Positions 200 through 25,177 of a DNA stretch of 47,607 nt are shown one piece after another (within the stretch, counting starts at the first letter, position 1; every line of letters starts with the position of its first letter). Position numbers and translations under genes: made by a program. This stretch comes from Macrostomum lignano (Eukaryota): the NCBI GenBank assembly GCA_002269645.1, contig NIVC01000071.1, positions 1-47,607 on the forward strand. Direction: 5' to 3'. Below the pieces are notes generated by a model. That model did no database searches. It had not been told where the DNA came from and worked only from the letters and a program-made list of their open reading frames with translations.

Positions 200-288
200 C
201 TGTAAGAAAGGAAAGCAAAGTTGATATTAGTTGTGTAATATTTTTTAAATACTGACGTATTGACGTATTTATTGTTAAGGCCGCTGAC

Positions 289-534: not shown

Positions 535-616
535 CTGAAATTTGGACGAATTGAGAAGACCGGTCAGACCATAGTTAGGAGTTTCAAGAAAAAACTTAAG
601 AATCAAACTAATATAC

Positions 617-1726: not shown

Positions 1727-4700
1727 CACTGCGTCTTCTGACTCCAAGTCTCTTGCGTCGTTGTCGCTGTCAACAAAGCCGCAGCCTTCGCAGCTGGCAA
1801 CAGCGGGCGGCGGCGGGTTGCGGTCGCCGCCGTCATCGGGGATCAAGGGACTGGGCGAGATTTCGGGAGGGTCTCTGCTGCTAACTCGCTCGGTCAAGCT
1901 CGGCATAAGCGAATCGGCGCCCATGCACAGATTTGAGCATTCGACATCAATGCTGAGAGGTTCATCAACGGCGACTGAAGTTCTGGCTGACGAAGGTTCA
2001 TCCAACGGTAGCGCCGGCTGCTGCTCTTTGCTGTCGTTTTTGTCTAGCGAGCCTCGTGTGCCGATCAGATCGGCAGGATCGATGCCGTGAAGAAAGCCGA
2101 GCTGCGCGGCCATGGAGAGCGGATAGGCGGGCCCGTGTGGTACGTGGAGCACTCCAGTGTTTGGATCCACTAGCTGATCGTCAATAGCTTCTTGAAGTGT
2201 AATTCGCCGGCCTATTGGCGACTCCAGCGACAGAGTCACACCGTTTGGATCAATAGCTCCCGTCTCGATTGCTTCCTTGAATGTCAGCGGCTTGCCGCCC
2301 ACAACAACATGCGTGTCTTCACGGCACGGACTGGCAAGGCTGCTGTCGTCGTAGGAGATTCGATCATCTAGCAACGGTGACTTGCATGTTCGGGACTCAA
2401 GCGCTGGCTCTGGATAATCCGATGTGTACACTATGTCCATGGACATTGATCCTAGAGACATCAGCGAAGTGTCGTTGAGCGTTGGAGACGCTTCAGCTTG
2501 CTCAGCGTTTGATCGTCTTTGCTGAGGCAGATTCGCAGACTTCTTCGGCAGTGGAAACGACATCGATAGATCTTCGCTGCGCGGCGTGAAATTGCCAATA
2601 GAGTCGTCTTCTGTATCCTCTTCGACCATTTCGATGGTTTCACTGTCGCTTGGAATGTCGATATTGTCAACAGAAGCTTCGTCTTTTCGTCCGGTTGAAC
2701 AAACAGATCCATGCTGAGGAGATTGCACCGCTGATTCTGGTTGGCCAGTGGTATGGAACTCTTGTTCAGGCGTTATTCGCATCGGCTCGGCCGCCTTGAT
2801 TTCGATTTCTGTCACAGCCATGGGATGCTGAGTTGGCATAGACTGTTTTGTTGTTGCAAACTCCATCTGTTCTACTTGTTCTTCGTTTAGTTCAGCAACT
2901 TCCGATTTAGGTGCGAGTCCTGCTGTCTTTATGTCACTCTCGCATCTGAGGTGAACTGCGAGCACCAGTGTTTCTGAGTTTACCACCCTGATAGCATCCT
3001 TCGCTGCACGCCTAACTTTGCACACGAAATCAGTCCTCTTTAATGTTAAATCGCGTTCGTCCACTGTTTTTTCATCGCTCCCTAATTTATCTTTTGAATG
3101 AAAATCGGATGAAATCGGTTGATTTGCATCGTTTTCAGTTGAAGCCTCAGCTTGGCTATCGATGTGCAGAGACTGCTCAAACTCAACACTTGCACCATCA
3201 AGTTCAGTTTCCACTGGCGATTCAAAGCTTCTCTCCAGCTCGATTGCGGATTCAAGTCCGGATTCAGAAGGGTTCTCATGCAAACCTGTGCCCTTGTAGT
3301 CTGGAACCGAGCAAACTGAATCTCGGGAGTCCTTTCCAGAACTTCTCAGTTTAACTTCCAACACAGCTGTCTCTCGTTCAACCACATGAGGCGTTACGAC
3401 GTCATGCCTATCCCCGGAAGTGGCATCTCGATGGGAAAGGTTAGATCCTCTGCGACCAATGGACTCATTATCTTCCTCGAAAAGTACTTCGAAGTCACTT
3501 TCCGACTGGTTGAATGAAGGCTCGCGACTGTTCTGATGAGGCTGCAGTTGATTTTGCGAATCCGTACTTTTTCCTGAATCATCAAAACTTTCATGCTTAA
3601 TATTGATAGGCTGCATAACTGACGTGACGGACGCATCGCCTGCTGTTGGATCTACCGACATCAAGTCTTTATCACTAGCTGAACTATCTGCATCTGGGTT
3701 TGTGTCATCATCAAGGTGCATTGAAATCTCCAGACTGGTTGTATTTTCTGTTGCTTCTTCGCCGAGGCCTTCTGGTGTCGGTAGGTTGTCACTACGCTGT
3801 CTAACGTTTTCGGCATCAGCTGACTGATCAGGTATTTGCAGCGAAACAGCAAGCACCATTGTCTCAGTGTCCAGCGTAAAAGTACGATTTGCAAGCCCAG
3901 AAGTTTCAAGAACTGGTCTTCGGAACTCCTCAATAAAGCCTGCTTCGCTGGTTTCTGCCTCTTCAAATGGTGGCTCTAAGGAAATGCTGAGGGATTCGAT
4001 GTCACTGAACCTGCTATCGGGCTTTTTCAAGGACTCAAAATCTTCATCAGATGGTACAGTTGCAGTGTCGAGAGATTGTGAATCCTCCCGCTTCGAATCG
4101 AAATCTATTTCCTTTTCAAATTCACCTAAATGCACTTCAGCTTCGGGCTTAACACTTGTCAGATCGTCAGCAGCGATTTCACAAGAGCTTAATTCGTCAG
4201 ACTGACCTTCGACTACTTTGCTGGAGCTTTCGGGGCATTTTAAAAATGCGTTTTCCTCATCGTCTGTCTTATCATTGCGAAGCGTGACAGCCAGCCCATG
4301 ATGTTCGATGTCCATTTTCATATGGACTCGCTTGACATCGGGACTTTCCTCGGAAATTTCCTCTGTCTCTTCCAGTGTCCCAAACGAGTTAAGTCGTTTT
4401 CTTTTCTGCAGACTATCGGATGTCAAAGATCTACCGATTCTGTAGTCTTGGAATTCTTCAGGTTCATCCAGCTCCATCGAGATTGATATAATTTCACTCT
4501 CTGTTGCCTTGGACTCAACCTCAGCACCTCCAGCATTACTCAGCGAACTTTCGTGAAGTAATCGTTGGTTGTCATTCTGGGGCTCATCGAGCTCGAGCGA
4601 AATTGAAATCGTTTCAAATTCTTTTTCCACTGCAGGGAACTCCTGATTATCAGCTGTCGGTTCCTCTCTGCTTGCAAGCTTGACTCCGCTTTCTGGCTGC

Positions 4701-7700
4701 TCGCTGTGGCTTGGTGAGGGATGCAGATTCTTCAACGAATCAACTTTTAAATTCTCGTTACTTGTGCCTAAAATAGGGACCTCAGAATCTTCTTGTTGCA
4801 CGACTGCCATGTCATTCGAGTGAATGTCTTTTCCATTAGACACTCCTTCATTAGGCCGGAGGTCTGGGTAGAACTCGGAATCCGCGGGACTGAAACCTCG
4901 ACACGCAGGTTGGTCAAGGTCAGCTCGAGCTGTCAACTGTTGATTTTCTAGCCTTGATTTTTCGCTGAGAGATTCGCTGTTGGAATCAAGCATATGGTCA
5001 CCAGCAGACTCACTATGGTCCGGTTTTGAAGAGTTAAACTCTTCCTGGCTTGGTTCAGACCCAAAGCTGTTGTCTTTTGAATCGGTCAGTTTATACACCT
5101 TGTCAGGTGCCTGTTGGCTTGATTTGAGAATGACTGTAGCATCGCTAGGACTTGACCCGGAGTCTGAGTCGTAGTCATCATCGTCAGCTTCCTGACGTAG
5201 CTGAGCTGCAAGCACGTGACTCTCCGAGTCAAAACTGCTTTGTACAAGTGGCTCACACTCAGGCTCATTTGCTTCTATATCATCAGTGTCAAACAGACTT
5301 TCCTCTGTTGTTTGAGAAACAGTATTTACGTCTTTTAGTCCTGGTGTGACGTCAGAATGCTTGCTCATTTTCTCCACAGCAGTTTCCGGGAAGTGTTTGG
5401 AGCCTGGCATCTGCTGACGTGAGGGACTGTGTTTCTTGAGACATTCTTCGCTAAGCAGATCAGTCGGCTCACATGATTCCGAAAGATGCTTTGAAGACGA
5501 TCTTTCCGTTTCTGCAGTACTTTCGAAACTTTTCTCAATCCCGATGGTTGGAAAACCAGATGGAGAGTCGCCTCTCTTGGAATCCTCGGTACTGTTGCCA
5601 GCTGATTCTCCTTCATTTGCACCGCTCTCCTTTGGAATCGGCTCAAAATTATTTGACGAAAGATCATTGCGCCGAAGAAACTCTGGAACTGGTACAGCTT
5701 CATTTGGTTCGGTAGAAGCCTGGTCAGGAAAGCCAGACAGAAGATTTTCATCATTCCTGCACAGTCGCACAGCTAGGACATAGGTTTCCGTCTCCGCAAC
5801 ACGCTGAAGAGGCGCTCTGTCTTCTGCTTTGCTGCTAATTTCCTTATCATCCGGGAAAGTAGCATAAAACTGTGAGGCCGTTGTTCGCATTTCGATTGGC
5901 TGATGCTCGTGATTATCTAGAGTTGATTTATGCACGTCTTGCTGGGTGTCTGAAACACTGGTGATATGAGGCGGGCCAATTAGTGATGAATCTTTAGATG
6001 AACTGTGAATAGATGAGCCGTCGTCCATCGCACTCTCAGCAGCTCGCTCACTTTCCTGTACTTTTCCAGATTCCTGGAATGGTTGACGGTTTTGATCAAG
6101 TTCCTCTTCCTGTTCAGCGTCACCGCCCAGCTTCTCTGCAGCGTCTGCGATTTCCGACTCTTCATCCCGGTGTCGATTAGACTGTAAAATTTGGTCGGTC
6201 TTTCCACTGAACTTTTGCGAGTCCGGCTCAACATCTTTGACGTCGGCTGACTGAGTGACACCAGAATCTGCAGCAAAACCAGTCGGCTCATTGGTGTCAC
6301 TCTCCAAGGCATTCTCTGTAGTTTCTTTGCGCTTATCGACATCCTCATTCCGGTTTCTAATTGGTTCAGAGTCTTCCTGCTCACTGAGCTGGCGAATACA
6401 ATCAGAGTGAGAAGATTGCTCTGCCCCTGAACAAAGAACGTCATCGGCTGTGGTCTGTGCCTCCCAAGCCATGCGCTTGAAGTGTTCGGCTGGATTTTTA
6501 ATTACCACTGAAATGAACTCTTCGACTTCTTCAGAATCAGAAACTGAAATTTGCTCGTCGTCATATTCGCGCATTGGTTCACCAGCCTGCAGCTGTACTG
6601 CAAGAACGGCCGTCTCTGTATCAACAACAGTGTGAAAATTTTCAGGCAGATCATTCCTAAATGATTTCGCGCCTCGATCAGTTTCTGCAGCATCTGAAGG
6701 TGTGCGGTATTCCTTTGAATCCTTGCCAGATTGGTTACATTCATCTGTGTCCTGAGAATCAAGCTTTGAAGGAAACTCCTGCAATCCAGCCGGTGATGAT
6801 GCCTGAACGTTCACCCTCTCGGCCTTGCCCTCGTCACCCCAAAAGTCGAGGGTCTTTCCATCGTCACCTGATATTAGCTCATCGTCCAATTTGTCCTTGC
6901 GCTGTTCAAATGCGTCTCTCTCAGATTTGGCACCAATTGACGATTCGGATGCAGATTCATCATCATCAGCGATTGGAGTTTCGCTCACCTCTCTAATCTC
7001 TTTCTTGTTGTCCATTCTGACTTTTTGCTGGATTTCTTCGAGAAAAGATGCCAGCTCTTCTTCGCTGGCTGATGGGCGGGGCGCATTATCTAATAAATTT
7101 TCTGAGTCGGCTGTTTGGTCATTCTCGCCATCATTGGCCGCAAAATTCGGCCTGTCAGGCTTATTCTTCATCAAATCATCTCTGTCTGAGGACTCGCAAG
7201 GCTTTGTGAAGTCCGGGTGTAGAGAAGGCTCGGGTTCAACATCGAGATACTTCTCGGCGGGTTCAGCTTGGTTATGAAGGATTTCTTCCGAATCGTTGGA
7301 ACTGACGGATTGGTCTTCATAGCGCTCTAGCGTGCCGGTCCTGGTGGTGGGCACCAAGTTGTCATCAGATTCATAAGGCTGATCTTTCAGGCTTGCAGAC
7401 TCCGTACGAAGCTGCACGGCGAGAACTTGAAACTCGGAGTGTACAATTTTTTCGACACCTTTAACAGCTTTTATGGTAGGTTTCTCAGTGTCATTCGAGC
7501 TTTGGGATTTGGTTATTCTGCTTGGCTGTGTCTCCGTGGCGCTCTCGTTCTCATCTTTCAATGCGCTCACAAGCTTAATTGAGTCTTTATTTTCACTCAA
7601 ACTCTCAGCAGCTGGAATCGACTTTCGAGTTTGCTGCTCTTGTTTAAGAACAGATTCGCGCCTCTCCGTGTTGGCTAACATCTCTGTTTCGGAAAGAGGT

Positions 7701-8611
7701 CGTTTCAAACGGTACTCCGTGTCGCTAACGCCTTTATCAGGCTCGAACTCCAGACTGTCGGGCAGCTTGCGTTTACCAACCGGCACTGAGCTGACAGCTT
7801 CGGAGGGAAGGAACAGAGACTCTCCAGGTAGAACACTGCCCATTTCTTGATCCAACGGTTGATCCAGCAAGTTGCTTGTATCGCAAGGCTGCTCTTTTAT
7901 CGTAGTCGTAGATGGCAACACTTCATGTTCAGCAGTTTTTGAGTTGAGAATAGACTCTGAGCCATTGATGTCTGCTACTGAACCGGCTGCTGACTCAGGA
8001 CGGCTTGATCTGTCTAAAAACCCGGCATTAGTCGCATCAGCGCCCCTAAGAACAACATGGTCTGAAATCTTTGCTTTAGACAACACAGGATAGCTGACAG
8101 CCGCTGCCAGCTGCACTGGCAACTCCTGAACAACGTGTCTGTTCGCCTGCACTGGCTCAGCATACGACGCACCAGAGGTGCAAGCCTCAACCACCTCATC
8201 TTCGAACTCTACCAGCATGGAAACGTCTAGCTCAATCTGCTGACCGTGAATGACGTCCTCAAAGCAGACGCTCGAAGCGTCTGAACTTACTGAGATGTCC
8301 ACGATTTCGTGGTCATCAGCTTCGGACTGCTGAGAATTGAAATCTGAGTCGTCGTCATGTTTCTTGGGCAGACTGCGCTCGATAGAGACGCGTTCACGAC
8401 CTGACTGAATGGCATCAAAAGCCTTATCCACAGCTTCTTCTAAGCCTTGCTGCTTCTCAAAATCCACGTCCGCGCTCGACAGGCCTGATGGAGAAGCCGA
8501 CTGACCGAGCGAGTTAGGCTTAGTCTGCAAGCCAGAGACTAAATGACTGCCAGCATTCTGGGGCTGAGCATATTGGTTAGAGCTTTGGTTAGGGGTTTGG
8601 AAGCTCGAGGT
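1727..8611 (-). CDS. shot/MACF1/DST-like: Giant exon (2,295 codons): acidic Ser/Glu/Asp-rich low-complexity region ending in a plectin-repeat cluster
   Basis: Lies within ORF 1685-8617. Acceptor tttccttttttgttcggccacccatgcag|ACC, donor GTG|gtatgc, phase 0/0. Plectin-repeat motifs at ~2070-2310 (LTFKEAIETGAIDP, ITLQEAIDDQLVDPNTG, YPLSMAAQLGFL). Confidence 0.85.
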
Positions 8612-9123
8612 CTGCATGGGTGGCCGAACAAAAAAGGAAAAGTGTTAGATTTGTTATGTTTGAGAAAGCAACAATACAAAAATAGTTGCGTAAGTAATAT
8701 TGCAAGGTAAAACTGTAAAAGAAGCATTAGAAAATATTGATCAGCAGCTGCAATGCAATCCCTAAGACGTATTTTCGCTATGGCCAGAAATTTAGCGTAT
8801 GTTCGCGCATTGGTTTTAGACAAAAAAATGACAAAAAATAATTTGCTGGCCAAGCGCTCTTTAGCTACAGCGATCAAAGCTTCGTTATTATTCACACTCC
8901 GTGCGGTCCACTCGATAATCGGATGTGTGACTGAGGTGATCACGAGATCTGGTAGCTGATTTATAGTAAAAATCGCAATCAAAAACTTTAATCAATCAAG
9001 TGGCTGTTAAATTTCAAATATTAGATCCAATTTTGTTTCCTAAGTTATGTCCACTACGTAAGCCAAGCGAAAATCAGCGACACTCTTGCGCAACTTTTTT
9101 TCAAAAAAGACTATTTTACCAAC

Positions 9124-12100
9124 CTGATTTGGAATGCTCACTTGCAGCGCATCTTTGACGGCGAGTTCAGACTGACCCGCGGCACCCAGAGACAGCTCTG
9201 GGATGCTTCCCGCCGCTGGTTTACCACTGGATACCCCCTCAGCCAAGTCCGGGACATTCAGTTCTGCAACAGTCTGTTCTGTTGAATCTGCTGCTTGACC
9301 CGATGTGTCCTGATCGGATGAAAAATCGTTGGCATGCTTTAAGGAAGGCTCACCAGCACTATCTGCAGGTTTCTCTTTATCGATACCGCTAAAGCATGGG
9401 ATTGCTTGTTCCTCGACCAGCTGATGAGATTCCACAGATCGCGTAGGGAAGGCAGGTTGTTCCACCGGATCGTGTACGGCTGTCGATGAAAGCTTTGGAT
9501 CCGCGACGCTTTGATCGTTTCTCTGTTGAACATCCGAATCACCGCTCAATATTGCTGGCTCAGCTCCAACTGAATGCACTGATGGCTGCAGCTCCAAATC
9601 AGACGGCTGCAATTCCGATTGGCCAGACCCAGTTTGTGGGAGATGATCAGAACCTAAGATGACGGTTGGTTCTTCATGCTTTGATTTAGAAAGACTTGGC
9701 TGCTGTACTGATCCAGAAGGATCTACAGTTGACATCGATGCTGATCCAGGAAGGCCTATTAAAGGTTGGTGCTGCTGTTCTGATCCAGCAAGGCCTGTAG
9801 TTGGTTGTCGTTCTGATGCAGCAAGGCCTGTAGTTGGCTGCTGTTCTGATCCAGCGAGGCTGGTAGTAGGCTGCTGCCGTTGCTCAGATCCAGCAAGGCC
9901 TGTTGAAGGCAGTCGTTCTGATCCAACAAGGCCTGTATTTGGCTGCTGTTGCTGTTCTGATCCAGCGACGCCTGTAGCTGGCTGTTCCTCTGATCCAGTG
10001 AAGCCTGTTGAAGGCTGTCGTTCTGATCCAGCGAGGCCTATAGTTGCCTGCTGCTGTTGTTCTGATCCAGCAAGGCCTGTAGTTTGCTGTTGTTCTGATC
10101 CAGCAAGGCTTGTAGTTAGCTGCTGTTCTGATCTAGCGAGGCCTCTAGTTGGCTGTTGCTGTTGTTCTGATCCAGCAAGGTCTGTAGTTGGCTGCTGTCG
10201 TTGATCTAATTCAGCGAGGCCTGCTGAAGGCTGCTGTTGTTCTGATCCAGCGAGGCCTGTAGTTGGCTGCTGTTCTGATCCAGCAAGGCCTGTAGTTGGC
10301 TGTTGTTCTGATCCAGCGAGGACTGTAGTTGGCTGCTGTTCTGATCCAGCGAAGCCTGTAGTTGGTTGTCGTTCTGATGCAGCAAGGCCTGTAGTTGGCT
10401 GTTGTTCTGATCCAGCGAGGACTGTAGTTGGCTGCTGTTCTGATCCAGCGAAGCCTGTAGTTGGCTGCTGTTCTGATCCAGCGAGGCCTGTGGTTGCCTG
10501 CTGCTGTTGTTCTGATCCAGCAAGGCCTGTAGTTGGCTGCTGCCGTTGCTCAGATCCAGCGAGGCCTGTTGAAGGCTGTCGTTCTGATCTAGCGAGGCCT
10601 GTAGTTGGCTGCTGCTGTTGTTCTGATCCAGCAAGGTCTGTAGTTGGCTGCTGTCGTTGATCTAATTCAGCGAGGCCTGCTGAAGGCTGCTGTTGTTCTG
10701 ATCCAGCGACGCCTGTAGTTGGCTGCTGTTCTGATCCAGCAGGGCCTGTAGTTGGCTGCTGCCGTTGCTCAGATCCAGCGAGGAATGTAGATGGCTGTTC
10801 CTCTAGTTCAGCGAGGCCTGTAGATGCCTGCTGCTGTTGTTCTGATCCAGCGACGCCTGTAGTTGGCTGCTGCTGTTGTTGTGATCCAGCGAGGCCTGTA
10901 GTTTGCTGCTGCTGCTGTTCTGATCCAGCAAGACCTGTAGTTGGCTGCTGTTCTGATCCAGCAAGGCCTGTAGTTGGCTGCTGTTCTGATACAGCGACGC
11001 CTGTAATTGGCTGCTGTTCTAATCCAGCAAGGCCAGTAGTTTGCTGTTGTTCTGATCCAGCAAGGCCTGTAGTTGGCTGCTGCCGTTGCTCAGATCCAGC
11101 GAGGCCTGTAGTTGGCTGCTGATCTGATCCAGCGACGCCTGTAGCTGGCTGTTCCTCTGATCCAGCGAGGCCTGTAGATGGCTGTTCCTCTAATTCAGCG
11201 AGGCCTGTAGATGACTGCTGCTGTTTTTCTGATCCAGCGACGCCTGTAGTTGGCTGCTGCTGTTGTTGTGATCCAGCGAGGCCTGTAGTTGGCTGCTGTT
11301 CTGATCCAGCAAGGCCTGTAGTTGGCTGCTGTTCTGATCCAGCGACGCCTGTAGTTGGCTGCTGTTCTAATCCAGAAAGGCCTGTAGTTGGCTGCTGCTG
11401 TTGTTCTGATCCAGCGAGGACTGTAGTTGGCTGTTGTTCTGATCCAGCAACGCCTGTAGTTGGCTGCTGTACTGATCCAGCAAGGTCTGTAGTTAGCTGC
11501 TGATCTGATCCAGCGACGCCTGTAGCTGGCTGTTCCTCTGATCCAGCGAGGCCTGTAGATGGCTGTTGTTCTGATCCAGCAAGACCTGTAGTTGGCTGCT
11601 GTTCTGATCCAGCGACGCCTGTAGTTGGCTGCTGCTGTTCTGATCCAGCAAGGCCTGTAGTTGGCTGCTGCTGCTGTTCTGATCCAAAAAGGCCTGTAGT
11701 TAGCTGCTGATCTGATCCAGCGACGCCTGTAGCTGGCTGTTCCTCTGATCCAGCTAGGCCTGTAGTTGGCTGTTGTTCTGATTCAGCGAGACCTGTAGTT
11801 GGCTGCTGCTGTTGTTCTGATCCAGCAAGGCCTGTAGTTTGCCGCTGCTGCTGTTCTGATCCAGCAAGACCTGTAGTTGGCTGCTGTTCTGATCCAGCAA
11901 GGCCTGTAGTTGGCTGCTGTTCTGATCCAGCGACGCCTGTAGTTGGCTGCTGTTCTAATCCAGAAAAGCCTGTAGTTGGCTGTTGTTCTGATCCAGCGAG
12001 GCCTGTAGTTGGCTGCTGCTGTTGTTCTGATCCAGCTAGGCCAGTAGTTGGCTGCTGCTGTTGTTGTGATCCAGCGAGGCCTGTAGTTCGCTGCTGTTCT

Positions 12101-15100: not shown

Positions 15101-18100
15101 CCTGTAGTTGGCTGCTGCTGTTGTTCTGATCCAGCAAGGCCTGTAGTTGGCTGTTGCTCTGATCCAGCAAGGTCTGTAGTTGGCTTCTGCTGCTGTGCTG
15201 ATCTAGCAAGACCTGTAATTGGCTGCTGTTCTGATCCAGCAAGGCCTGTAGTTGGCTGCTGTTCTGATCCAGCAAGGCCTGTACTTGGCTGCTGTTCTGA
15301 TCCAGCAAGGCCTGTAGTTGGCTGCTGTTCTGATCCAGTGACGCCTGTAGTTGGCTGTTGCTGTTGCTCTGATCCAGCGAGGTTTGTAGTTGGCTGCTTT
15401 TCTGATCCAGCATAGCCTGTAATTGGCTGCTGTTCTGATCCAGCAAGGCCTGTAGTTGGCTGCTTTTCTGATCCAGCAAGACCTGTAGTTGGCTTATGCT
15501 CTGATCCAGCGACGCCTGTAGTTGGCTGTTGCTGTGATCCAGCGAGGCCTGTAGTTGGCTGCTGCTGTTGTTCTGATCCAGCGAGGCCTGTAGATGGCTG
15601 TTGCTCAGATCCAGTGAGACTTCTATTTGGCTGTTGTTCTGATCCAACAAGGCCTGTAGTTGGCTGTTGCTGTGATATAGCGTGGCCTGTAGTTGGCTGT
15701 TGCTCTGATCCAGCAAGGCCTGCAGTTGGCTGTCGTTTTGATCCAGCGAGGCCAGTAGTTTGCTGTTCCTCTGATCCAGCGAGGCCTGTAGTTGGCTGTT
15801 GCTCAGATTCAGTAAGGCCTGTAGTTGGCTGCTTCTCTGATCTAGCGTGGCCTGTAGTTGGTTGTTTTTCTAATCCAGCGAGGCCTGTAGTTGGCTGTTG
15901 TTCTGATTTAGCGATGCCTGTAGCTGGCTGTTGCTCTGATCCAGTGAGACTTCTAGTTGGCTGCTGTTCTGATCCAACGAGGCCTGTAGTTGGCTGCTGT
16001 TCTGATCCAGCGAGACCTGTAGTTGGCTGTTGCTCTGATCCAGCAAGGTCTGTAGTTGGCTGTTGTTCTAATCCAGCGAGGCCTGTAGTTAGCTGCTGTT
16101 CTGATCCAGCGATGCCTGTAGCTGGCTGTTGCTCTGATCCAGCGAGGCCAGTAGTTGGCTGTTGCTCAGATCCAGTGAGGCCTGTTGAAGGCTGTCGTTC
16201 TGATCCAGCGTGGCCTGTAGTCGATAATTGTTCTGATTCACTGAGGCCTGTCAAAGGTTGCTGGTGCCGTTCTGTACCATTGAAGTCTGTAGTTGGCAGG
16301 CCAACAAGGCCCGTCTGACCTTTTGGTGATGCAGATTCTGATGCTGAAAGTTGATCTATAGAAGTGCTGTCTGATGCAGGCAGCTGACATTTAGCAGTTG
16401 CGTTGAGGGCAGCATCTGCTTTCGGTTGCTTGTCCGTTCTTAAAGCAGGTGGTTCTACTAACTGCTCAACTTTTTCTTTTGGACTAAATGAGGCAGGTAC
16501 CTGATCAACTGCGGTGAGTCGCCTATCATTCGATTGTTGACTAGCAGGTCTTTCATGGGAATTAGTATCGGAATTAACTTCATTGCCAGCAAGGGTTTTA
16601 GAGATGGACTCTTTCTCTGTTTGGACTTTTGGGATCTGGTAGTGGAAATCTCCTGAGAGCTGCTCTGTCAATCCTTGACCTGTAGGCTTCTCTTCGAATG
16701 AGTAATTCGCTTCTCTTGCAATAGTGGGCGTCTGACTGACTGGCGCGAGTTTCAATTGAGTAGGTTCATTCTGCCTGTGCTTCGGGTCCACTTGAGCTTG
16801 GCTTAATGCGTCTCCGCTGTAGTCACTGCCGGGGTGCAAAAGTTCCCGCCCTGGCTGCTGTAGTGAAGGCTTTTCCGCGACGCCTGGCTGACTCACGTCT
16901 CCCTTGGCACCCTTAATCTCTTGCGCGCTGTCAATTTCTGGAGCCGAAACTTTTGCTACCTTGGCCTGGGGAGGCGTCGGAATAGTTTGCTCAGGTTGAC
17001 TCAACTCAGAAGCAGCTGCCGTTGCGCCGCTGCTTCCCGGCAACCTTGGAAAATGATTTGCAAGCCGATTTTGCCCGCTTTCACTGCCGGGGGTTTGAGC
17101 ACGTTTCTTTGCTTGGCTAACAATCGCTGGATTACGCGTGTCCGCTAATCCGTTCAATTGATCGGCGGTCTCCTGCCAGTTGGTTTCCTCGTCGATATTA
17201 TCTTCGCAATCGAATTGCGACTCGGTGCACCTGCACCGTTGCAGTTCGTGCAGCTGGTCCATGGTGATCAGGCCCAGTTGAACTGCTTCTGCCAAACTGA
17301 TTGGCCGTCCGTTTGCCGGGTTCACCAGACAACGCCTTCGAGGGTCGTAGGACGCTGCCAGCTCGCGAAAGCTGGGTAGCAGACGTTTCAGCAGAGCCTC
17401 GGCCTCCTCCTGGCTAATGAGGCCCCGACGAACAGCTTGACTTAGAGACAGTCGAGCTCCAGACGCAGAGTCTTCAATTCCAGCGTAGCAATGCCACAGA
17501 CCGAGCGGCCCCGTCTCGAGCTTTACCACCTCGGCCAGCGAGTCAGCAACTTGCTGAGTTACCAGACCGTCCAAGACTGTAACGAAATCCACACCCGAAG
17601 CCAGCCGCAATACTAGTCGAACAGATCGGAGAGCGCTGGAAAATTCCAAGCTGGGCACCCGATGCTGATGACCCTCGCTAAGCAAGTCCCCGTTGTGCAA
17701 GTGGACGAGTTTTTCGCGGAGAGCGGTCTCAAGTGGAGTCGAACGACCCGATTCTTCGACAACAGTGGACTCGACCAGATGAAAGATGCCTCTCTGCAGA
17801 CAGTCGCCAAAGCAAAGCGGCTCGCCGCTGACTGTGTCGAAAAAGAGCAGAACGGGCTGAAAGTCGGGGCCCAGGCCGGCTCGGTAGGTCTCTGAGCCAA
17901 ACAACAGCGGGTCGGAGCCTCCGAGGGGCTCCGGGCGACGGCTAAAGTTAAACATGGTCACCCCGCCGTCCTGGCCCAGGCGGGCAGTCAGGCAGTTGGG
18001 AAGGCCGCTGGGGGTGCCCTGGGGCCCAGCGGACGGGTCTTGCTTAACGGGGTCAGTCTGAAACAGGCCCGTCTGTGTTGGCAGCGACGGCTGCGCTTTC

Positions 18101-18168
18101 AAGTCAAAGCCGCCGCCGCCGCCGCCACCGCCGCCGCTGCTGCGGCTGCTGACGCTGTTATCGGGAAC
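9124..18168 (-). CDS. shot/MACF1/DST-like: Giant exon (3,015 codons): plectin repeats, then a ~6.5 kb 11-aa tandem repeat
   Basis: Acceptor aacccag|GTT at 18169/18168 is in frame with ORF 9040-18102. Donor CAG|gttggt, phase 0/0. Plectin repeats at ~17250-17850 (AGIEDSASGARLSLSQAVRRGLIS, LVNPANGRPISLAEAVQLGLI). Confidence 0.88.
9740..16290 (-). repeat. Coding minisatellite, 33-bp core unit with 36/39-bp Gln-extended variants, encoding (P)TTGLAGSEQQ(QQ), about 190 copies
   Basis: Directly visible as + strand tgttctgatccagcaaggcctgtagttggctgc repeats. Copy number estimated from length divided by mean unit. Confidence 0.97.
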
Positions 18169-18878: not shown

Positions 18879-21519
18879 CTGATTGTCGATAGATCTCGCC
18901 AGCTGCCGCTCGTGCGGTGCCGAGATGATGCGGATCCTAGCGGCCTCTTCAAGCGGCGCTGAGCAGCCTGTGTTGGTGTCGAGCACCGCTCCAGTCACCG
19001 GGTTCACCAGTTCGCGATTCAGCGCCGTTGCCAGCGACACGGACTCGCCAGCGCTGAGGTCCCGCACCAGCACTAGATCCGGGTGCAAAATAGCTGACTC
19101 CACAGTTTGAGGAAATGTCGCGTTTCGACCGTCTCCATCGCTGAACTGCAGTCTCTCGGGTCCCAGTTGTCTTGGACCAGCCGGCGCAAGTAGAGGCAGC
19201 CGGCATAGGGTGCACTGAGGACTCGGAGAGTACCGTTGGCGAGACACTCGGTCAAACGGTCTTCGTCGAGTTCATTGCGGTTAAGAATTCCCAGCTCGAA
19301 TGCCTGTTCCAGACTAATTTCGGTAGGAGCCTGTTCGCCTTCGCTCTTTATCGCCAATTTCGTGCCTTGATGGCTGAGAAAATCCTCACGTATCGCTCGA
19401 GCCAAGCTGACGGGTTCCAGGGTGTCTGGCCGGTAGCAGCAGAGCAGCTCTGGATTGTAGGCGCCTTCCATGGCCAGTTGCAGCGCCGTTGGGCGCTTTG
19501 AAGACGACCACTGGGGTTGCAGGCGACCGGCCGCTTGGTTGGGCAGGCTGGTGTCGTATCCGTGGTGGAAATCGGCCTCCTTTTCATTGTCACCGGAGCT
19601 ACTTGGATAAGTTTGGCGATTAAAGTCTCCGGTCTGTGTAGGGTCCATTTGCTGAGTAGGCACTGCTGATCGAGAAGGATCAACTTGCTGAGTAGACATT
19701 CCTGGTTGAGCAGGATCAACTTGCTGAGTAGACATTCCTGGTTGAGCAGGATCCACTTGCTGAGTAGACATTCCTGGTTGAGCAGGATCAACTTGCTGAG
19801 TAGACATTCCTGGTTGAGCAGGATCCACTTGCTGAGTAGACATTCCTGGTTGAGAAGGATCAACTTGCTGAGTAGACATTCCTGGTTGAGCAGGATCCAC
19901 TTGCTGAGTAGACATTCCTGATTGAGAAGGATCCACTTGCTGAGTAGACATTCCTGGTTGAGCAGGATCAACTTGCTGAGTAGACATTCCTGATTGAGAA
20001 GGATCCACTTGCTGAGTAGACATTCCTGATTGAGCAGGATCAACTTGCTGAGTAGACATTCCTGGTTGAGCAGGATCAACTTGCTGAGTAGACATTCCTG
20101 ATTGAGAAGGATCCACTTGCTGAGTAGACATTCCTGGTTGAGCAGGATCAACTTGCTGAGTAGACATTCCTGATTGAGCAGGATCCACTTGCTGAGTAGA
20201 CATTCCTGATTGAGCAGGATCCACTTGCTGAGTAGACATTCCTGGTTGAGAAGGATCAACTTGCTGAGTAGACATTCCTGGTTGAGCAGGATCAACTTGC
20301 TGAGTAGACATTCCTGATTGAGAAGGATCCACTTGCTGAGTAGACATTCCTGATTGAGCAGGATCAACTTGCTGAGTAGACATTCCTGGTTGAGCAGGAT
20401 CAACTTGCTGAGTAGACATTCCTGATTGAGAAGGATCCACTTGCTGAGTAGACATTCCTGGTTGAGCAGGATCAACTTGCTGAGTAGACATTCCTGATTG
20501 AGCAGGATCCACTTGCTGAGTAGACATTCCTGATTGAGCAGGATCCACTTGCTGAGTAGACATTCCTGGTTGAGAAGGATCAACTTGCTGAGTAGACATT
20601 CCTGGTTGAGCAGGATCCACTTGCTGAGTAGGCACTGCTGATCGAGAAGGATCAACTTGCTGAGTAGACATTCCTGGTTGAGCAGGATCCACTTGCTGAG
20701 TAGACATTCCTGATTGAGAAGGATCCACTTGCTGAGTAGACATTCCTGATTGAGAAGGATCCACTTGCTGAGTAGACATTCCTGGTTGAGCAGGATCAAC
20801 TTGCTGAGTAGACATTCCTGATTGAGCAGGATCAACTTGCTGAGTAGACATTCCTGATTGAGAAGGATCCACTTGCTGAGTAGACATTCCTGGTTGAGCA
20901 GGATCCACTTGCTGAGTAGACATTCCTGATTGAGCAGGATCCACTTGCTGAGTAGACATTCCTGATTGAGAAGGATCCACTTGATAAACCAAATCTCCAG
21001 CACGAGTCCGATGAACTTGGCTAGCAAAGTTCTCTTGTTTATCAGGATCGCCAAGGTGACTAGAATTGGCAGGATGCGAGAAATCATTTTGATGATTTGC
21101 CGGTCGGCTAACATCCTCCTGGCTGCTGCTCATTGCCAATTCGTCGGCCAGCGCATGCAAAGCGTCGATTTGCTCTTCCTCGTCCATTGGCACATCCTCG
21201 CCCTGCTGTTCGTACCGGTTTCCCAGTCGCCTGTCGCCAAACTTGTTCTGCGGCGCCGATCCGGTTGGCTGCATGAAGGCGTCGGCGCCTGCTCGGGCCA
21301 TCCGTACTGAGCTGATCGGCTGATCTTGTTGCGCCTGCTGCGCCTGACGCTGCAGCAGCTCATCATCGGTATCTCCTGGTTGAATCGCCTCAGGCAAAGA
21401 AGCAGGCATATGACCGAGCTGCTCGGGGCGGGCAGGGGGACAGAATCGGGCTGAGGAAAACCATCACCGAAAGTCTGCGAGGAGGATGACTGCTGCGAGG
21501 AAGCAGCCGGGTTCGAAGC
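18879..21519 (-). CDS. shot/MACF1/DST-like: Large exon: 12-aa tandem repeat plus plectin repeats, with 1-2 apparent single-base deletions
   Basis: Acceptor ggtttcag|GCT at 21520/21519 (alternative phase-0 acceptor at 21419/21418), donor CAG|gtaggg. ORFs 19073-21409 and 18867-19247 join by a -1 shift at 19158-19160 (WD-P-ERLQFS). Plectin repeats include EISLEQAFELGIL and ESVSLATALNRELVNPVTG. Confidence 0.8.
19640..20990 (-). repeat. Coding minisatellite, 36-bp unit encoding QQVDP(A/S)Q(P/S)GMST, about 37 copies
   Basis: Directly visible: + strand acttgctgagtagacattcctg(g/a)ttgag(c/a)aggatc(a/c). Confidence 0.97.
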
Positions 21520-22085
21520 CTGAAACCGTTGGGTGCGAAGAGAGAAGTGAGGAGATATGAACACTAAACAGGGTATTGGCAGCGGATGAAAAAAGCCCAG
21601 GAAACACCGGACATGCGTAAAACTTTACAAAGTGTAAATATGAACCAGCGACCACGAGTAAAGCCAATATCCCAATAAGAAGACTACTGAATATGCGACG
21701 AAAGAAAACAGTTGCCAAAACCTGAGCTTTTGCGACAACTTACTCTGACTCTGCTGAACTGCTGATTGTTGAAACTTCTCGCCAATGACTTATAAGAGTG
21801 TAATACCTGACACTAAGGTAAATTAACTAACCGAAAGTTTCCTAGAGTGAAACTTATTGCATTTATAGTGGCTACGAAGGATGTTATGCTTTTAACTACT
21901 GGCAGTATTCTGTACATTAGCGGCAAATGCTACAGTTAGACAAACACACTCAGATTATGAAAAGCAAACGAAAAGCTTCTGATCTCAGGAAAATAGTCCT
22001 AATTCAATGGTCAGCCCGTCTCCGGCCACAGAAACGGCTGCAACCAGAGAACCAGGCTGCAACCAGCCGAGACTGCGCGCCATAC

Positions 22086-25000
22086 CTGCGACATCGGATC
22101 GCCGCCAGCTAAAGTGGCAGCGGCTGCCGCGTCGGCCACAGTCAGGATGCCCATCTTCTCGGCGGTCTCCAACGAGATGAGAGCGCCGCTCGGATCCTTG
22201 ACCTGGCCGGTGGCTGTCAGCTCGTAGCCCGAACGCAAGCGAAATCGTTGCGGTTGACTCGACGCGTCCGCCAGCACGCCGCCGGGATGGTCCAGTGCAA
22301 GCACGGCCGCTCTATCGGCTCCTAGAAGCTCTGCCGTAAGCTGCTCCTGCTGCTTTGGCAACGAACGCGCCGCCTGATGCAAAGGTTCTCTGACGGAATC
22401 GCCAACGTCCTTCGGCAGCTTGCGAGGCGCCTCAAGCGTCAGTTCTTCCTCCACAGTTCTGGCGTGGTAGTTGTCGAACGGGTGCGTCAGGCTGCTAGGA
22501 GCTCGAGACAGTGGTATTGTCTGCACCTGGCCCTCGCGCATGGCATCCGTCAGAATGGACACATCGCCAGTTTTGGTATCCAAGTAAGTCGCTCGCACCG
22601 GATCAATCAGACCGCGCTCCAGTGCTTCAAATACGGACACTCGGGTCTTGTTGTACGAGTCGTACACACCCTGAATCTCGTGCATGTGGTGCCTACTGTC
22701 GTACTGTTCCACGTACATTTTTCCGCGACCGACAGTCACGACAGTGGCGTAGGCGCTTCTCTTTCTAATAGCCTCGACAATAGTGATGCGCTGCAGGCTT
22801 TCCGGGTCTTTCAGAGTCCCGGATTCGAGATCCACTTCTCCGCTAACCAGCATCTGGTTGGTCACGCGTCCTTGCATTTTTGTGTTGCCGTGCTTCAGGC
22901 AGAGCATGTCCAGCACGCAGTTTCTCTCCAGTGCGCCACCGGCGCCGCTGACGCTGCTGATATCGCTTAGCTGACGACCGGACGGCCGGCCATCGTCTCC
23001 TTCTTTGTTCTTGGCTCCGTTTGTTCTGCTCGAACTGGACGGCTTATCTGTCTGTTGTTGTTTCTGTTGCTGTTTCTGCACCTGCGGCTGACTAGACTGA
23101 TTCTTTGAGCCAGAGAGATTCGAATAGATTGGATCTGTTTCGGGTGCTGCAGAGGCAGCTGGCGCGGCTGTACGCCTAGCAAGCAAAGTGCTGGCAAGCA
23201 CCGAAAGCTCTGATCCGGCCGCAGACGTTACCGCCGATGACGAAGCCGCCGGCGAGTCGAGAAACGGTCCTCCTGAGGCCTGAGCAGTTACGGGCAGCTG
23301 TGTAACGTCTGTCAATTCGCTGCCCTCGCTGGCGGTGTCTGCGTTATGCTTGGAACCCGTCGCTGACCGCGCGCTACCACCAGTTAGCGATGTCGGCGTA
23401 CGTCGCTCCTTGCTGCGCACGCTCGTCACCGACTGAGGCGGATCCAGCCACCCAGACGCAATCGCTCGATCAATCGCACCGACGGACGTCCAGGCAGTTC
23501 CACAGCGTTGCGCTTGTAATCGACGAATCCTCGACTGAGCGCCTCTTCAAATGTCATGTGGTCGGCAGCCATCGGAGTTTCCTCAGGCAGCAGGCCCTCT
23601 AAAACAGCGTCGGCAAAGGTTAAATTTTGTCCGCTGCTGCGACACCTCACGCTGCCGGATTCGGGATTCAGCAGACAAGTGGCAATAGCTCGGTTCAGTG
23701 GCACCTGAGCGCCAGTGTCGGGGTCGACTATGGTCGACAACTGGGCGTCAATGAGACCCCGGTTCAGCGCCTCAGCAATTGTGAATGGCGCACCGGGAAG
23801 CGGGAGCACCAGCAGTCCAGAGGTCTCGTCGACGAGGCCTCGAGTAAGCAGTTCGTTCAGCGTTGGCGCAGTTGCAGCCGGTCTTGAAGCAGCAGCCGAA
23901 ATTGAAGTAGCTTCAGGAGATGTGTCGATGCGCAAAGCTTTCATTTGCTGCCCTTGCTTCTGCTGCTGCTCTTTCTGTGTCTGCTTTCGCAGTGTCTCTT
24001 CGCTTTCGTCTTTGTCTTCATTGCTGAGTCGCCGTTTTCTGTGCTGTGATTGCTGCTGCTGCTGCTCTGCAAGTGCAGCCGCCATTGCTGCAGCTTGGGA
24101 TTGTCCCTGTTGCGGGCTGGTCTCTCTCGGCTGCCGCGAAAGTTCCCCTGGCCTGGCAATCGATTTGCTACCTTGGCTTATAGGGACAGTTGCTGTCTCT
24201 GCGCCGCCCAGCCCCCACTCCGCGAGTGAGTGCTGCTCCTCTGACCGGGGGAGCTTAATCGGATCTCCCCCGCCAGCCAAGTCGCTCCGATCGATTGGGC
24301 CGGATCTGCGCGAGACCAGGGCCGGGGCTGCCTGTACAGTCGCCATAGAAACCGGAGAAACAGTCGTACTCGCCGTGAGCTGCACTGGGCTGCGCAACTG
24401 GGTTAGCGGAAGCGCTCTCTCACTGCTGACTAGAACGCTAGTGCCGGCCTCCTGAACTGCCTCATCAGCTGCAGTGAAATCAGCAACGGACCAGCCGTCG
24501 CGATTATGTCTGATTGGAGAAGCAACAGCAAAATGGTTAGGCACATCAAGCACTGGACTAGGAGTGTTAGTTAGAATTGCACGCTTAGGCAGCAACTGCT
24601 GGTAGTCGCTTTCGCTTCCACCGCTACTGCCGACGTTGCTGTTGTTTAAACTGGCGTTAGCTAGGCTTAAGCTCTCATGCTTGGACGCTTGCAATACCTG
24701 CTGCCGGTGCTCAAGCAAAGCGACCAGCTTTTGAAAATCTCCGTTGAGTCTAGCAAGCTCCTCCTGGAGCTGCTCGGCGCCACCTTCGCTGCCGGAGCTG
24801 CCGCTGCCGCCTCTGCCAGCAAAGTCGTAGGTTCGAGCTACTTCGATCAACTCTGTGCCAGTCGCGTTGAGTCCGGCAAGATCCGCGCCCGCCTGCTCGG
24901 CCGATCTGCCGACTTCCACGATCGCGTTGGCGTCCGCGGACGGCGCTGACTGCAAGCGGTGGTGACAGCCGGCCAGCCACACGGAGAACTGCTTCGCCAG

Positions 25001-25177
25001 GCGCATGTAGGCGTCGAACTGGCCGGCGCAATGGTCCAGCAGGGCGAGCCGCTGCTCCGCAACGTCGCTGAGTCGGCGCCATCTCTCTGCGGCGGGTCGG
25101 GTCAGCTTGCTCAGCTGAGCAGCGGCCTCGGCTTGCTCCAGATCCGACTTGGCCGATTCTAGAAGCTGCTGAACGTT
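22086..25177 (-). CDS. shot/MACF1/DST-like: Large exon: last plakin-domain spectrin repeat, linker and two plectin-repeat clusters, with one apparent -1 frameshift at ~23465
   Basis: Acceptor ccgtag|AAC, donor CAG|gtatgg. ORFs 23426-25006 and 22011-23429 join as ...VRLIE-AIASGWLDP.... Motifs include FTIAEALNRGLID, VSVFEALERGLIDP and ISLETAEKMGIL. Length 3092 equals 3n-1. Confidence 0.87.

What the first reader, a model, noticed from the sequence alone, without database searches (positions are those of the whole stretch)
1727..25177. About 7,200-aa plectin-repeat insert built from four phase 0/0 giant exons, including a ~4,800-aa stretch with no recognisable folded domain
Seen: exons of 3092, 2641, 9045 and 6885 nt all start and end in phase 0, so any subset can be skipped without losing frame. 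Plectin-repeat clusters (~23450-23870, ~22150-22900, ~18900-19500, ~17250-17850, ~2070-2310) are separated by low-complexity spacers, the largest running from ~17250 to ~2310. Established: Drosophila Shot and the mammalian MACF1b/BPAG1b isoforms carry an alternatively spliced plakin-repeat insert at this position. Inference: here it is modular and very long, potentially a length-tunable entropic spring, by analogy with titin PEVK splicing. The window alone encodes about 8,500 aa before most of the rod.
Basis: partly seen in the sequence, partly recalled or inferred. Interest (0 to 1): 0.72.

Follow-up and report, generated by a model that had tools for sequence, protein, structure and literature searches.

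The report
Flatworm spectraplakin's giant repeat insert
This is the plakin-repeat insert of the Macrostomum lignano (flatworm) spectraplakin gene, a known kind of insert that is unusually long here because most of it is disordered spacer, including a 9-kb exon made largely of a 33-bp coding tandem repeat that the public gene models leave out.

Summary
The window is a whole contig of the Macrostomum lignano Mlig_3_7 assembly. Its minus strand carries the 5' half of a spectraplakin gene: two CH domains, a plakin domain, the insert, then the first rod exons.

They are 25177-22086, 21519-18879, 18168-9124 and 8611-1727. Three match a GenBank model, built from RNA-seq, of a 97-99% identical sister locus. 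All have AG/GT borders in phase 0.

Caveats:
- In the window, exons 1 and 2 each lose frame at one-base homopolymer deletions, probably assembly errors.
- Exon 3 (9,045 nt) is skipped in both deposited models, so no transcript supports it.
- Phase 0 is the rule across the gene (13 of 16 introns), so it permits skipping but is not evidence for it.

Exon 3 still looks coding. It is open for 3,015 codons here and 4,457 in the sister copy. It has no frameshifting indels, dN/dS is about 0.5, and its head has plakin-repeat homology.

The other roughly 6,300 aa are disordered by composition: a 33-bp array (187 versus 314 copies), a 36-bp array (37 versus 30) and an acidic region.

This is a new variant of a known kind. 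The spring idea is untested.

The parts
22086..25177 (-). Giant exon 1 (3092 nt here, 3093 nt in sister locus L002). It holds the last spectrin-like repeat of the plakin domain, a low-complexity linker and two plakin-repeat clusters. It loses frame at 23476.
   Evidence: Projection of P0002 exon 26037-29129. Borders are tag|AACGTT and TCGCAG|gtatgg. Pfam Plectin scores 44.2 and 27.4 bits.
18879..21519 (-). Giant exon 2 (2641 nt here, 2391 nt in L002). It holds a linker, the 36-bp coding array and a plakin-repeat cluster at its 3' end. It loses frame at 21439 and 19160.
   Evidence: Projection of P0002 exon 29696-32086. Borders are cag|GCTTCG and AATCAG|gtaggg.
9124..18168 (-). Giant exon 3 (9045 nt here, 13,371 nt in L002). 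It holds a plakin-repeat cluster, a linker, the 33-bp coding array and a unique tail. Neither deposited model includes it. A second phase-0 donor, CAA|gtgagc, lies 15 nt upstream, giving an exon end at 9139.
   Evidence: It is open in one frame only. Borders are cag|GTTCCC and AATCAG|gttggt, identical in L002. dN/dS is 0.50 for the head and 0.53 for the tail, with no indels in the unique parts. The head matches plakin-repeat proteins at E=7.7e-40.
1727..8611 (-). Giant exon 4 (6885 nt here, 6870 nt in L002). It holds about 2,090 aa of acidic S/E/D-rich sequence and then a three-unit plakin-type cluster. Its donor joins it to the rod exons.
   Evidence: Models P0001 (this contig) and P0002 both splice ...ESEDAV|IDAKKM.... 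All 5 indels against L002 are multiples of 3, and dN/dS is 0.56.
9771..16251 (-). 33-bp coding tandem array, 187 copies here and 314 in L002. The peptide unit is TGLAGSEQQPT, with units of 11 or 13 aa.
   Evidence: TRF.
19640..20983 (-). 36-bp coding tandem array, 37 copies here and 30 in L002. The peptide unit is QVDP(A/S)Q(P/S)GMSTQ.
   Evidence: TRF. The 252-nt difference is and the unit analysis. The array is part of the deposited model P0002.
23427..23821 (-). Plakin-repeat cluster 1 (five units). The frameshift at 23476 lies inside it.
   Evidence: Pfam Plectin E=1.7e-11. Own HMM.
22143..22823 (-). Plakin-repeat cluster 2 (three units plus one weak unit).
   Evidence: Pfam Plectin 27.4 bits. 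Own HMM.
18906..19447 (-). Plakin-repeat cluster 3 (four units).
   Evidence: Pfam scores only 14 bits, below threshold. phmmer gives 14-18 bits against the other clusters versus a shuffle maximum of 4.4. Own HMM.
17248..17853 (-). Plakin-repeat cluster 4 (four units), at the head of exon 3.
   Evidence: Pfam Plectin 41.5 bits. PDB envoplakin, desmoplakin and plectin at E=0.007-0.5. 108 relatives in the representative library.
2072..2323 (-). Plakin-type cluster 5 (three units), at the tail of exon 4.
   Evidence: No Pfam or PDB hit. phmmer gives 27.0 bits against cluster 1 versus a shuffle mean of 0.4 and maximum of 8.8. Own HMM.
2940..7440 (-). Acidic disordered region of exon 4. It carries eight copies of the short motif (T/S)E(T/S)xVLAVxL(R/Q), 133-464 aa apart.
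   Evidence: Regex and alignment. All eight are kept in P0002.
25316..40557 (-). Upstream exons of the same gene: start codon, CH1, CH2 and the plakin domain. Exons 26486-27139, 25988-26275 and 25316-25726 carry five more one-base indels relative to L002.
   Evidence: Exon projection. CH E=1.7e-43. PDB MACF1 4z6g at 3.6e-79 and plectin. Indels.
1..763 (-). First rod exons (763-617, 534-289 and 199-1). The contig ends inside the third.
   Evidence: Pfam Spectrin at E=6.4e-6, below the family threshold.

Best explanation
The region is the plakin-repeat insert of the Macrostomum lignano spectraplakin, the counterpart of Shot/MACF1/dystonin. [quoted passage not shown]

Shown:
- Exons 1, 2 and 4 are spliced into a CH-domain transcript model at the near-identical sister locus.
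- That same model joins exon 2 directly to exon 4.

Inferred, about 85% likely:
- Exon 3 is a real protein-coding exon used in some mRNAs. If so, at least two size classes of insert exist: about 4,200 aa without it, and about 7,200 aa (this copy) or 8,600 aa (sister copy) with it.

Inferred from composition:
- Only about 12% of the insert consists of plakin-type repeat units. There are about 20 units in five clusters, spaced 22-31 aa apart rather than the canonical 38 aa.
- The rest is intrinsically disordered and net negative. It comprises a Q/G/T/S/E-rich array of 11/13-aa units, a 12-aa array and an acidic S/E/D region with eight copies of a conserved short motif.

Proposed working (inference):
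- The clusters act as small binding modules, for intermediate filaments or junction proteins as in other plakins.
- They are strung on long flexible acidic tethers, which set the reach between the actin-binding head and the rod.
- Tether length would change coarsely by use of exon 3, and in the germ line by gain and loss of array units.

The window's frameshifts are most likely consensus errors of the long-read assembly.
For: Identity of the sequence:
- The contig is NIVC01000071.1 of GCA_002269645.1, M. lignano.

Gene architecture:
- Two CH domains, E=1.7e-43.
- Best solved relatives are the MACF1 and plectin actin-binding and plakin domains.
- Spectrin-type exons lie downstream.

Transcript support:
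- P0002 is in NCBI nr. The GenBank annotation was built from RNA-seq with StringTie/TACO.
- P0001 on this contig uses the same exon 4 donor.

Exon 3 as coding sequence:
- 0 stops in 3,015 codons here and 4,457 in L002, against 45-227 stops in the other frames.
- AG/GT borders are identical in both copies.
- No indel in 2,562 nt of unique sequence, while 7 of 8 indels in flanking introns are not multiples of 3.
- dN/dS is about 0.5.
- Array units are 33 or 39 nt, and variation among them is highest at codon position 3.
- The head scores 41.5 bits on Pfam Plectin and E=7.7e-40 against a plakin-repeat protein.

Spacers:
- No Pfam domain and no plakin unit.
- All lie on the disordered side of the charge-hydropathy line, while the clusters lie on the folded side.

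Array copy number:
- It differs between the two copies.

Frameshifts:
- Eight one-base indels, seven of them a difference in the length of a 2-6-base homopolymer run, lie in exons with 0-0.9% substitutions.
Against: - No transcript, protein or database entry contains exon 3. Both deposited models skip it, and two protein searches with its unique parts found nothing from M. lignano.
- That negative is weak. Exon 4, which is in the models, also has no Logan members. One search also failed to return P0001 despite 117 identical residues.
- The exon 3 donor (gttggt) is weaker than the gene's other donors.
- dN/dS of 0.5 rests on few changes: 19 synonymous and 30 non-synonymous in exon 3.
- Array copy numbers in a 2017 long-read assembly may be wrong.
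- The binding and tether roles are inferred, not tested.
- The AlphaFold model of cluster 4 was too poor to use (pLDDT 48).
Confidence: 0.78

Rival explanations
1. Exon 3 is not used. It is an intronic minisatellite together with the remnant of a former plakin-repeat exon, and the only real insert is exons 1, 2 and 4 (about 4,200 aa).
For: Both deposited RNA-seq-guided models join exon 2 to exon 4 or start in exon 4. No protein in the databases contains exon 3. The donor gttggt is weak. Arrays of stop-free units stay open trivially.
Against: The unique head (1,917 nt) and tail (645 nt) are open, in frame with the array and free of indels in both copies. Flanking introns, by contrast, carry frame-breaking indels. 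dN/dS is about 0.5. Array variation peaks at codon position 3, and units are only 33 or 39 nt. Short-read assemblers and repeat filters tend to lose a 6-11 kb array.
Confidence: 0.13
2. The window copy is a decaying duplicate (pseudogene). Its eight one-base indels are real, and only the sister locus is functional.
For: There are eight frame-breaking indels between 19160 and 26931. The DV1 line carries extra duplicated chromosomes, so redundant copies exist.
Against: Seven of the eight indels are differences in the length of a short homopolymer run. They lie in exons with almost no substitutions; two exons have indels but zero mismatches. Exons 3 and 4, about 16 kb, have none, and their indels are all multiples of 3. 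The sister contig also seems to carry such an error near its end. This pattern fits long-read consensus error better than decay.
Confidence: 0.18
3. Exon 3 serves as an alternative first or last coding exon rather than an internal cassette. In one version, a leader is trans-spliced to its acceptor, giving a repeat-headed isoform like MACF1-4. In the other, the transcript ends in the exon 3-exon 4 intron, giving a plakin-repeat-ended isoform like VAB-10A or BPAG1e.
For: M. lignano trans-splices many mRNAs. The frame reads through the donor to a stop 27 codons on, and an ATTAAA lies at 8992. Isoforms of both kinds are known in other spectraplakins.
Against: The read-through tail is not kept in frame in the sister copy, because an A-run indel changes it. 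Both borders are phase 0 and fit the neighbouring exons. No trans-splice or poly(A) data are at hand.
Confidence: 0.12
4. The insert is a length-tunable entropic spring, and differential splicing of the four exons sets the elasticity, as in titin PEVK.
For: The spacers are disordered by composition. All borders are phase 0. One exon is skipped in the recorded isoform. The contour length of the spacers would be in the micrometre range (own estimate).
Against: Phase 0 is the gene's norm, at 13 of 16 introns. Only one isoform is on record. There are four giant exons rather than many small ones. The composition is Q/G/T/S/E or acidic, not PEVK-like. Nothing shows that the protein bears tension in series.
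Confidence: 0.15

Closest known systems
Drosophila Short stop (Shot) isoforms with the plakin-repeat exon (Roeper and Brown 2003, PMC2173965)
   Same: [quoted passage not shown] The exon is giant and optional. The repeats are not grouped into canonical 4.5-repeat domains and diverge in the second helix. The resulting protein exceeds 8,000 aa.
   Different: Shot has one exon of 10,497 nt with 33 repeats. Here there are four exons totalling 21.7-25.7 kb with only about 20 repeat units. About 88% is disordered spacer, including two coding tandem arrays. Flatworms have cytoplasmic intermediate filaments and flies do not (own knowledge), so the classical binding partner may exist here.
Mammalian MACF1b and BPAG1b (dystonin-b)
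   Same: [quoted passage not shown]
   Different: MACF1b has five recognisable A/B/C-type plakin repeat domains. I recall no long tandem-array spacers there. Here the clusters are small (3-5 units) with 22-31 aa spacing.
GenBank model of the sister locus (P0002, 5,543 aa, NIVC01000513.1) and P0001 on this contig
   Same: It is the same gene family copy at 97-99% DNA identity. Exons 1, 2 and 4 have identical borders.
   Different: The models omit exon 3 (13,371 nt there, 9,045 nt here). The window copy has frameshifts, so its model starts only at a methionine inside exon 4.
Titin PEVK region
   Same: It is a long disordered tandem-repeat segment inside a giant cytoskeletal protein, and its length differs between isoforms.
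   Different: PEVK is encoded by many small exons and is rich in P, E, V and K (own knowledge). Here single giant exons encode Q/G/T/S/E-rich units of 11/13 aa, and a mechanical role is untested.
Coding minisatellites (VNTR exons, for example in mucins or involucrin; own knowledge)
   Same: Units are multiples of three bases. The frame is kept over hundreds of copies. Copy number differs between genomic copies.
   Different: The host is a cytoplasmic cross-linker rather than a secreted or cornified-envelope protein.

Membership tests
Spectraplakin (Shot / MACF1 / dystonin / VAB-10) | N-terminal actin-binding domain made of two calponin-homology domains of the plakin type | tested here: met
   Pfam CH, two stretches, E=1.7e-43 on the spliced window exons. 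The best PDB matches are MACF1 4z6g (3.6e-79) and plectin.
Spectraplakin (Shot / MACF1 / dystonin / VAB-10) | Plakin domain (spectrin-like repeats) after the actin-binding domain | tested here: met
   The plectin plakin-domain structures 2odv/2odu match residues 296-503 at about 1e-14. Pfam Spectrin hits at E about 1e-6 fall just below the family threshold.
Spectraplakin (Shot / MACF1 / dystonin / VAB-10) | Long spectrin-repeat rod after the insert | tested here: inconclusive
   Only three rod exons lie in the window. Pfam Spectrin scores 27 bits against a threshold of 29.9. The contig ends inside the third exon.
Spectraplakin (Shot / MACF1 / dystonin / VAB-10) | C-terminal EF hands and a GAR/GAS2 microtubule-binding domain | not testable with these tools
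   Both this contig and the sister contig end in the first part of the rod.
Spectraplakin isoform with internal plakin repeats (Shot plakin-repeat isoforms, MACF1b, BPAG1b) | [quoted passage not shown] | tested here: met
   Model P0002 runs CH, plakin domain, exon 1, exon 2, exon 4, rod. Plectin repeats pass the Pfam threshold in exons 1 and 3.
Spectraplakin isoform with internal plakin repeats (Shot plakin-repeat isoforms, MACF1b, BPAG1b) | The insert is optional: isoforms both with and without it exist | tested here: inconclusive
   The only recorded isoform includes exons 1, 2 and 4 and skips exon 3. No expression data can be reached with these tools.
Canonical plakin repeat domain (desmoplakin A/B/C type) | Sequence match to the plakin/plectin repeat | tested here: met
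   Three clusters score 27-44 bits on Pfam PF00681. Two more are linked by within-gene similarity well above shuffles. Envoplakin, desmoplakin and plectin structures match weakly.
Canonical plakin repeat domain (desmoplakin A/B/C type) | 4.5 repeats of about 38 aa folding into one globular module | tested here: not met
   Clusters have 3-5 units spaced 22-31 aa apart. The AlphaFold single-sequence model was too poor to judge the fold (pLDDT 48).
Canonical plakin repeat domain (desmoplakin A/B/C type) | Binds intermediate filaments through a basic groove | not testable with these tools
   This needs binding assays.
PEVK-type entropic spring | Disordered tandem-repeat segment | tested here: met
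   The arrays and the acidic region lie on the disordered side of the charge-hydropathy line.
PEVK-type entropic spring | Many small repeat exons that are differentially spliced, with P/E/V/K-rich composition | tested here: not met
   The insert is four giant exons. The array composition is Q 20.7, G 15.3, T 15.1, S 9.8, E 8.5 %.
PEVK-type entropic spring | Bears tension in series and extends under force | not testable with these tools
   This needs mechanics or in vivo tests.
Coding minisatellite (VNTR exon) | Unit length a multiple of three, with the frame kept through the array | tested here: met
   Units are 33 or 39 nt, or 36 nt, with no stops in either copy.
Coding minisatellite (VNTR exon) | Copy number varies between alleles or copies | tested here: met
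   187 versus 314 copies and 37 versus 30 copies between the window and L002. The exact numbers depend on the assembly's accuracy.

The most novel reading that the evidence does not exclude
Exon 3 is a regulated cassette, and its 33-bp array adds a disordered tether of 2,200-3,600 aa to a cytoskeletal cross-linker. Protein length would then be set at two levels. Splicing decides whether exon 3 is in or out. Array copy number varies in the germ line, and the two genomic copies already differ by about 1,400 aa. The eight conserved TETxVLAVxLR motifs in exon 4 would act as multivalent docking sites along a second tether.
Probability: 0.3. Interest if true: 0.6.

Novelty: new variant of a known kind. 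Interest (0 to 1): 0.42.

Why it matters
Spectraplakins link actin, microtubules and, through plakin repeats, intermediate filaments or junctions. What the internal repeat insert does is still unclear even in flies.

M. lignano has transgenesis, and RNAi and in situ methods (own knowledge). It also has cytoplasmic intermediate filaments (own knowledge).

The version here is extreme: few binding-type units on very long disordered tethers, and one tether appears to be optional. That makes it a practical place to ask whether spacer length matters for a cytolinker.

It also flags a 9-13 kb coding exon that the public annotation omits. And it shows that frameshifts in this contig are probably assembly errors rather than biology.

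Tried and rejected
- Protein word-index searches. Exon 4, a chimeric query spanning exon 2/3/4 junctions and the exon 3 head found no transcript-derived protein with exon 3. The negative is weak. Exon 4 also has no Logan member, and one search missed P0001 although it shares 117 identical residues with the query.
- Unrelated hit. The only hit (P0004) is an unrelated dense plakin-repeat protein.
- Short intron at 23476. I looked for one to explain the frame change. The only GT...AG pairs there are 12-15 nt apart, so I rejected this.
- PDB sequence search with the exon 4 tail. It gave only a chance hit to a sensor protein.
- AlphaFold2 on cluster 4 without an alignment. It gave pLDDT 48, so I ran no fold search.
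- Self-BLAST of exon 4. It found no long internal repeats, only the short motif.
- Bacterial promoter/terminator scan of the exon 3-exon 4 intron. It is irrelevant for a eukaryote.
- Literature. Searches for Macrostomum together with plectin or spectraplakin found nothing.
- The idea that phase-0 symmetry marks cassette exons. I rejected it as evidence, because 13 of the gene's 16 introns are phase 0.
Full report
**What the window is**

The window is the whole 47,607-bp contig NIVC01000071.1 of assembly GCA_002269645.1. Cluster members and the accession NIVC00000000 identify this as Macrostomum lignano Mlig_3_7.

All long open frames of interest lie on the minus strand. Spliced together, the upstream exons (40557-28209) encode two calponin-homology domains (Pfam CH, E=1.7e-43). 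They continue into a plakin domain whose best solved relatives are MACF1 (4z6g, 3.6e-79) and plectin. Downstream of the finding, exons 763-617, 534-289 and 199-1 encode spectrin-type helical repeats.

So the gene is a spectraplakin-type cytolinker. Its EF-hand/GAR end cannot be checked, because the contig stops in the rod.

**A sister locus gives an independent yardstick**

The 90%-identity cluster of the model on this contig (P0001) also holds P0002. This is a 5,543-aa protein in NCBI nr, encoded on NIVC01000513.1 (locus L002).

L002 is collinear with the window. Unique sequence is 97.3-98.8% identical. The assembly's authors report extensive near-identical duplication in the sequenced DV1 line. 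They also state that the GenBank annotation derives from an RNA-seq-guided StringTie/TACO transcriptome.

**Check of the observation**

Mapping P0002 exactly onto L002 and projecting the exons to the window gives 25177-22086 (3092 nt), 21519-18879 (2641 nt) and 8611-1727 (6885 nt).

The fourth exon, 18168-9124 (9045 nt), is absent from both deposited models. It has the borders cag|GTTCCC and AATCAG|gttggt, identical in L002, where it is 13,371 nt. A second phase-0 donor (CAA|gtgagc) lies 15 nt upstream. In L002 all eight borders are AG/GT and phase 0.

In the window, however, exon 1 loses frame at 23476, and exon 2 at 21439 and 19160. Each is a one-base deletion in a C run relative to L002. 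This is why 3092 and 2641 are not multiples of three.

Five more one-base indels sit in the plakin-domain exons. Seven of the eight indels are differences in the length of a short homopolymer run. They lie in exons with 0-0.9% substitutions, and two exons have indels but no mismatch at all. I read this as long-read consensus error rather than decay. That is an inference. Exons 3 and 4 have no such indels.

**The repeat clusters**

Pfam's Plectin model passes its threshold for three clusters: cluster 1 (44.2 bits), cluster 2 (27.4 bits) and the exon 3 head (41.5 bits). It gives 14 bits for the exon 2 tail and nothing for the exon 4 tail. The PDB sequence search likewise misses the exon 4 tail.

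Both weak clusters are nevertheless clearly related to the strong ones. The exon 4 tail scores 27.0 bits against cluster 1, versus a shuffle mean of 0.4 and maximum of 8.8. The exon 2 tail scores 14-18 bits against four others.

An HMM built from 19 units finds units only at these positions:
- 23427-23821
- 22143-22823
- 18906-19447
- 17248-17853
- 2072-2323

It finds none in the remaining ~6,300 aa.

Units follow each other at 22-31 aa, not the canonical 38 aa. The same kind of departure was noted for Shot's repeats. The exon 3 head has 108 relatives in the 1.84-billion-protein library. The best is a 4,924-aa dense plakin-repeat protein (E=7.7e-40, 31% identity), and none is closer than 50%.

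**What the spacers are**

They are not diffuse low complexity.
- Exon 3 holds a 33-bp tandem array at 9771-16251, with 187 copies encoding TGLAGSEQQPT units of 11 or 13 aa.
- Exon 2 holds a 36-bp array at 19640-20983, with 37 copies encoding QVDP(A/S)Q(P/S)GMSTQ.
- In L002 the arrays have 314 and 30 copies. The insert is therefore 7,221 aa here and 8,575 aa there.
- Exon 4 is about 2,090 aa of S/E/D-rich sequence with net charge -253 and no Pfam domain. No homologue turned up outside M. lignano, which scored only the 8,000 candidates sharing most words.
- Exon 4 carries eight copies of a conserved motif, (T/S)E(T/S)xVLAVxL(R/Q), whose flanks are unrelated.

On a charge-hydropathy plot every spacer falls on the disordered side and the clusters on the folded side.

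**Is exon 3 a real exon?**

For:
- One frame is open for 3,015 codons here and 4,457 in L002. The other five frames have 45-227 stops.
- The unique head and tail (2,562 nt) have no indel between the copies. By contrast, 7 of 8 indels in the flanking introns break the frame.
- dN/dS is 0.50 and 0.53, compared with 0.30 for exon 1 and 0.56 for exon 4.
- Array units come only in multiples of three bases.
- Variation among units is highest at codon position 3 (0.133 versus 0.081 and 0.063; in L002 0.164 versus 0.090 and 0.061).
- The head encodes bona fide plakin repeats.

Against:
- Both deposited models skip it. P0002 joins ...SIDNQ|TSSFQ..., and P0001 begins at the first Met of exon 4.
- Its donor is the weakest in the gene.
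- No protein in the searched collections contains it.

The last point carries little weight. Exon 4, which is in the models, also has no Logan-derived members, and one search failed to return P0001. I put the chance that exon 3 is translated in some mRNA at about 85%. That it is a regulated internal cassette is less certain.

**Interpretation**

The position of the insert and its kinship with Shot, MACF1b and BPAG1b are supported. Plakin repeats in flatworm spectraplakins have been noted before in a survey.

Phase-0 symmetry holds, but it is the gene's norm: 13 of 16 introns are phase 0. It permits skipping without indicating it.

Exon 1 also contains the last helical repeat of the plakin domain, so it is not a neutral cassette.

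The 'entropic spring' is an analogy. The disordered character fits it. The exon architecture and composition do not resemble PEVK, and no load-bearing evidence exists.

My working model is that small plakin-type binding modules are strung on long acidic flexible tethers. The length of those tethers would depend on use of exon 3 and on array copy number. This is inferred.

**Novelty**

The gene kind, the insert position and three of the four exons are already in public annotation or literature. The following are new as far as I could find:
- the unannotated 9-13 kb exon built around a coding minisatellite;
- the copy-number difference between the two genomic copies;
- the scale of the disordered fraction, about 88% of the insert;
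- the eight-fold motif in exon 4.

That makes it a new variant of a known kind, of moderate interest.

Noticed in passing
window 2940-7440 (-), motif starts near 7426, 6607, 5779, 5215, 4297, 3856, 3364, 2965: There are eight copies of a conserved short motif, (T/S)E(T/S)xVLAVxL(R/Q), spaced 133-464 aa apart in the acidic region of exon 4. Their flanks are unrelated. All eight are kept in the sister copy. They may be a multivalent docking or strand-forming motif.
   Followed up: partly
window 26931, 26605, 26201, 25350, 25317 (-): Five further one-base indels relative to the sister locus lie in plakin-domain exons, outside the finding. One sits at a splice donor. The surrounding exons have almost no substitutions, which suggests this small contig was poorly polished.
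   Followed up: yes
L002 55480-55850; window 1-199: The stop codon of the deposited model P0002 (L002 55490) is followed by sequence that still reads like spectrin repeat in another frame. The sister contig probably has a frameshift error too. Both contigs end within about 730 bp of each other, inside the same rod exon.
   Followed up: partly
window 44549-45214 (+): A neighbouring gene on the opposite strand encodes a SURF2 homologue (Pfam PF05477, E=2.3e-20). The same neighbour is called in L002.
   Followed up: yes
window 31158-31503, 32348-33394, 34551-35043, 36156-38158, 38796-39137, 27235-27625, 45656-47500: The introns and the upstream region are packed with tandem arrays: (AG)175, 23-bp x45, a perfect 15-bp x33, 23-bp x87, 31-bp x11, 23-bp x17 and 28-33-bp arrays. 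Copy numbers differ from the sister locus, for example (CT)775 there against 175 here.
   Followed up: partly
P0016 (UniRef100_A0A1I8GMD7, M. lignano, 786 aa): Another M. lignano protein, named 'Glutaredoxin domain-containing', matches exon 3 residues 102-189 at 43% identity. Plakin-type modules therefore occur in at least one other gene of this species.
   Followed up: no
P0003 (UniRef100_A0A1I8J3M4); window 28101-28208: The UniProt entry for the CH/plakin part (596 aa) reads through the donor at 28209 into the intron (...YFKVGNWKNFSIK...). It is a mis-modelled fragment of the same gene.
   Followed up: partly
(tool behaviour): The word-indexed protein search did not return P0001, although the query ended with 117 residues identical to it. 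Negatives from that tool on low-complexity-rich queries are therefore unreliable.
   Followed up: no
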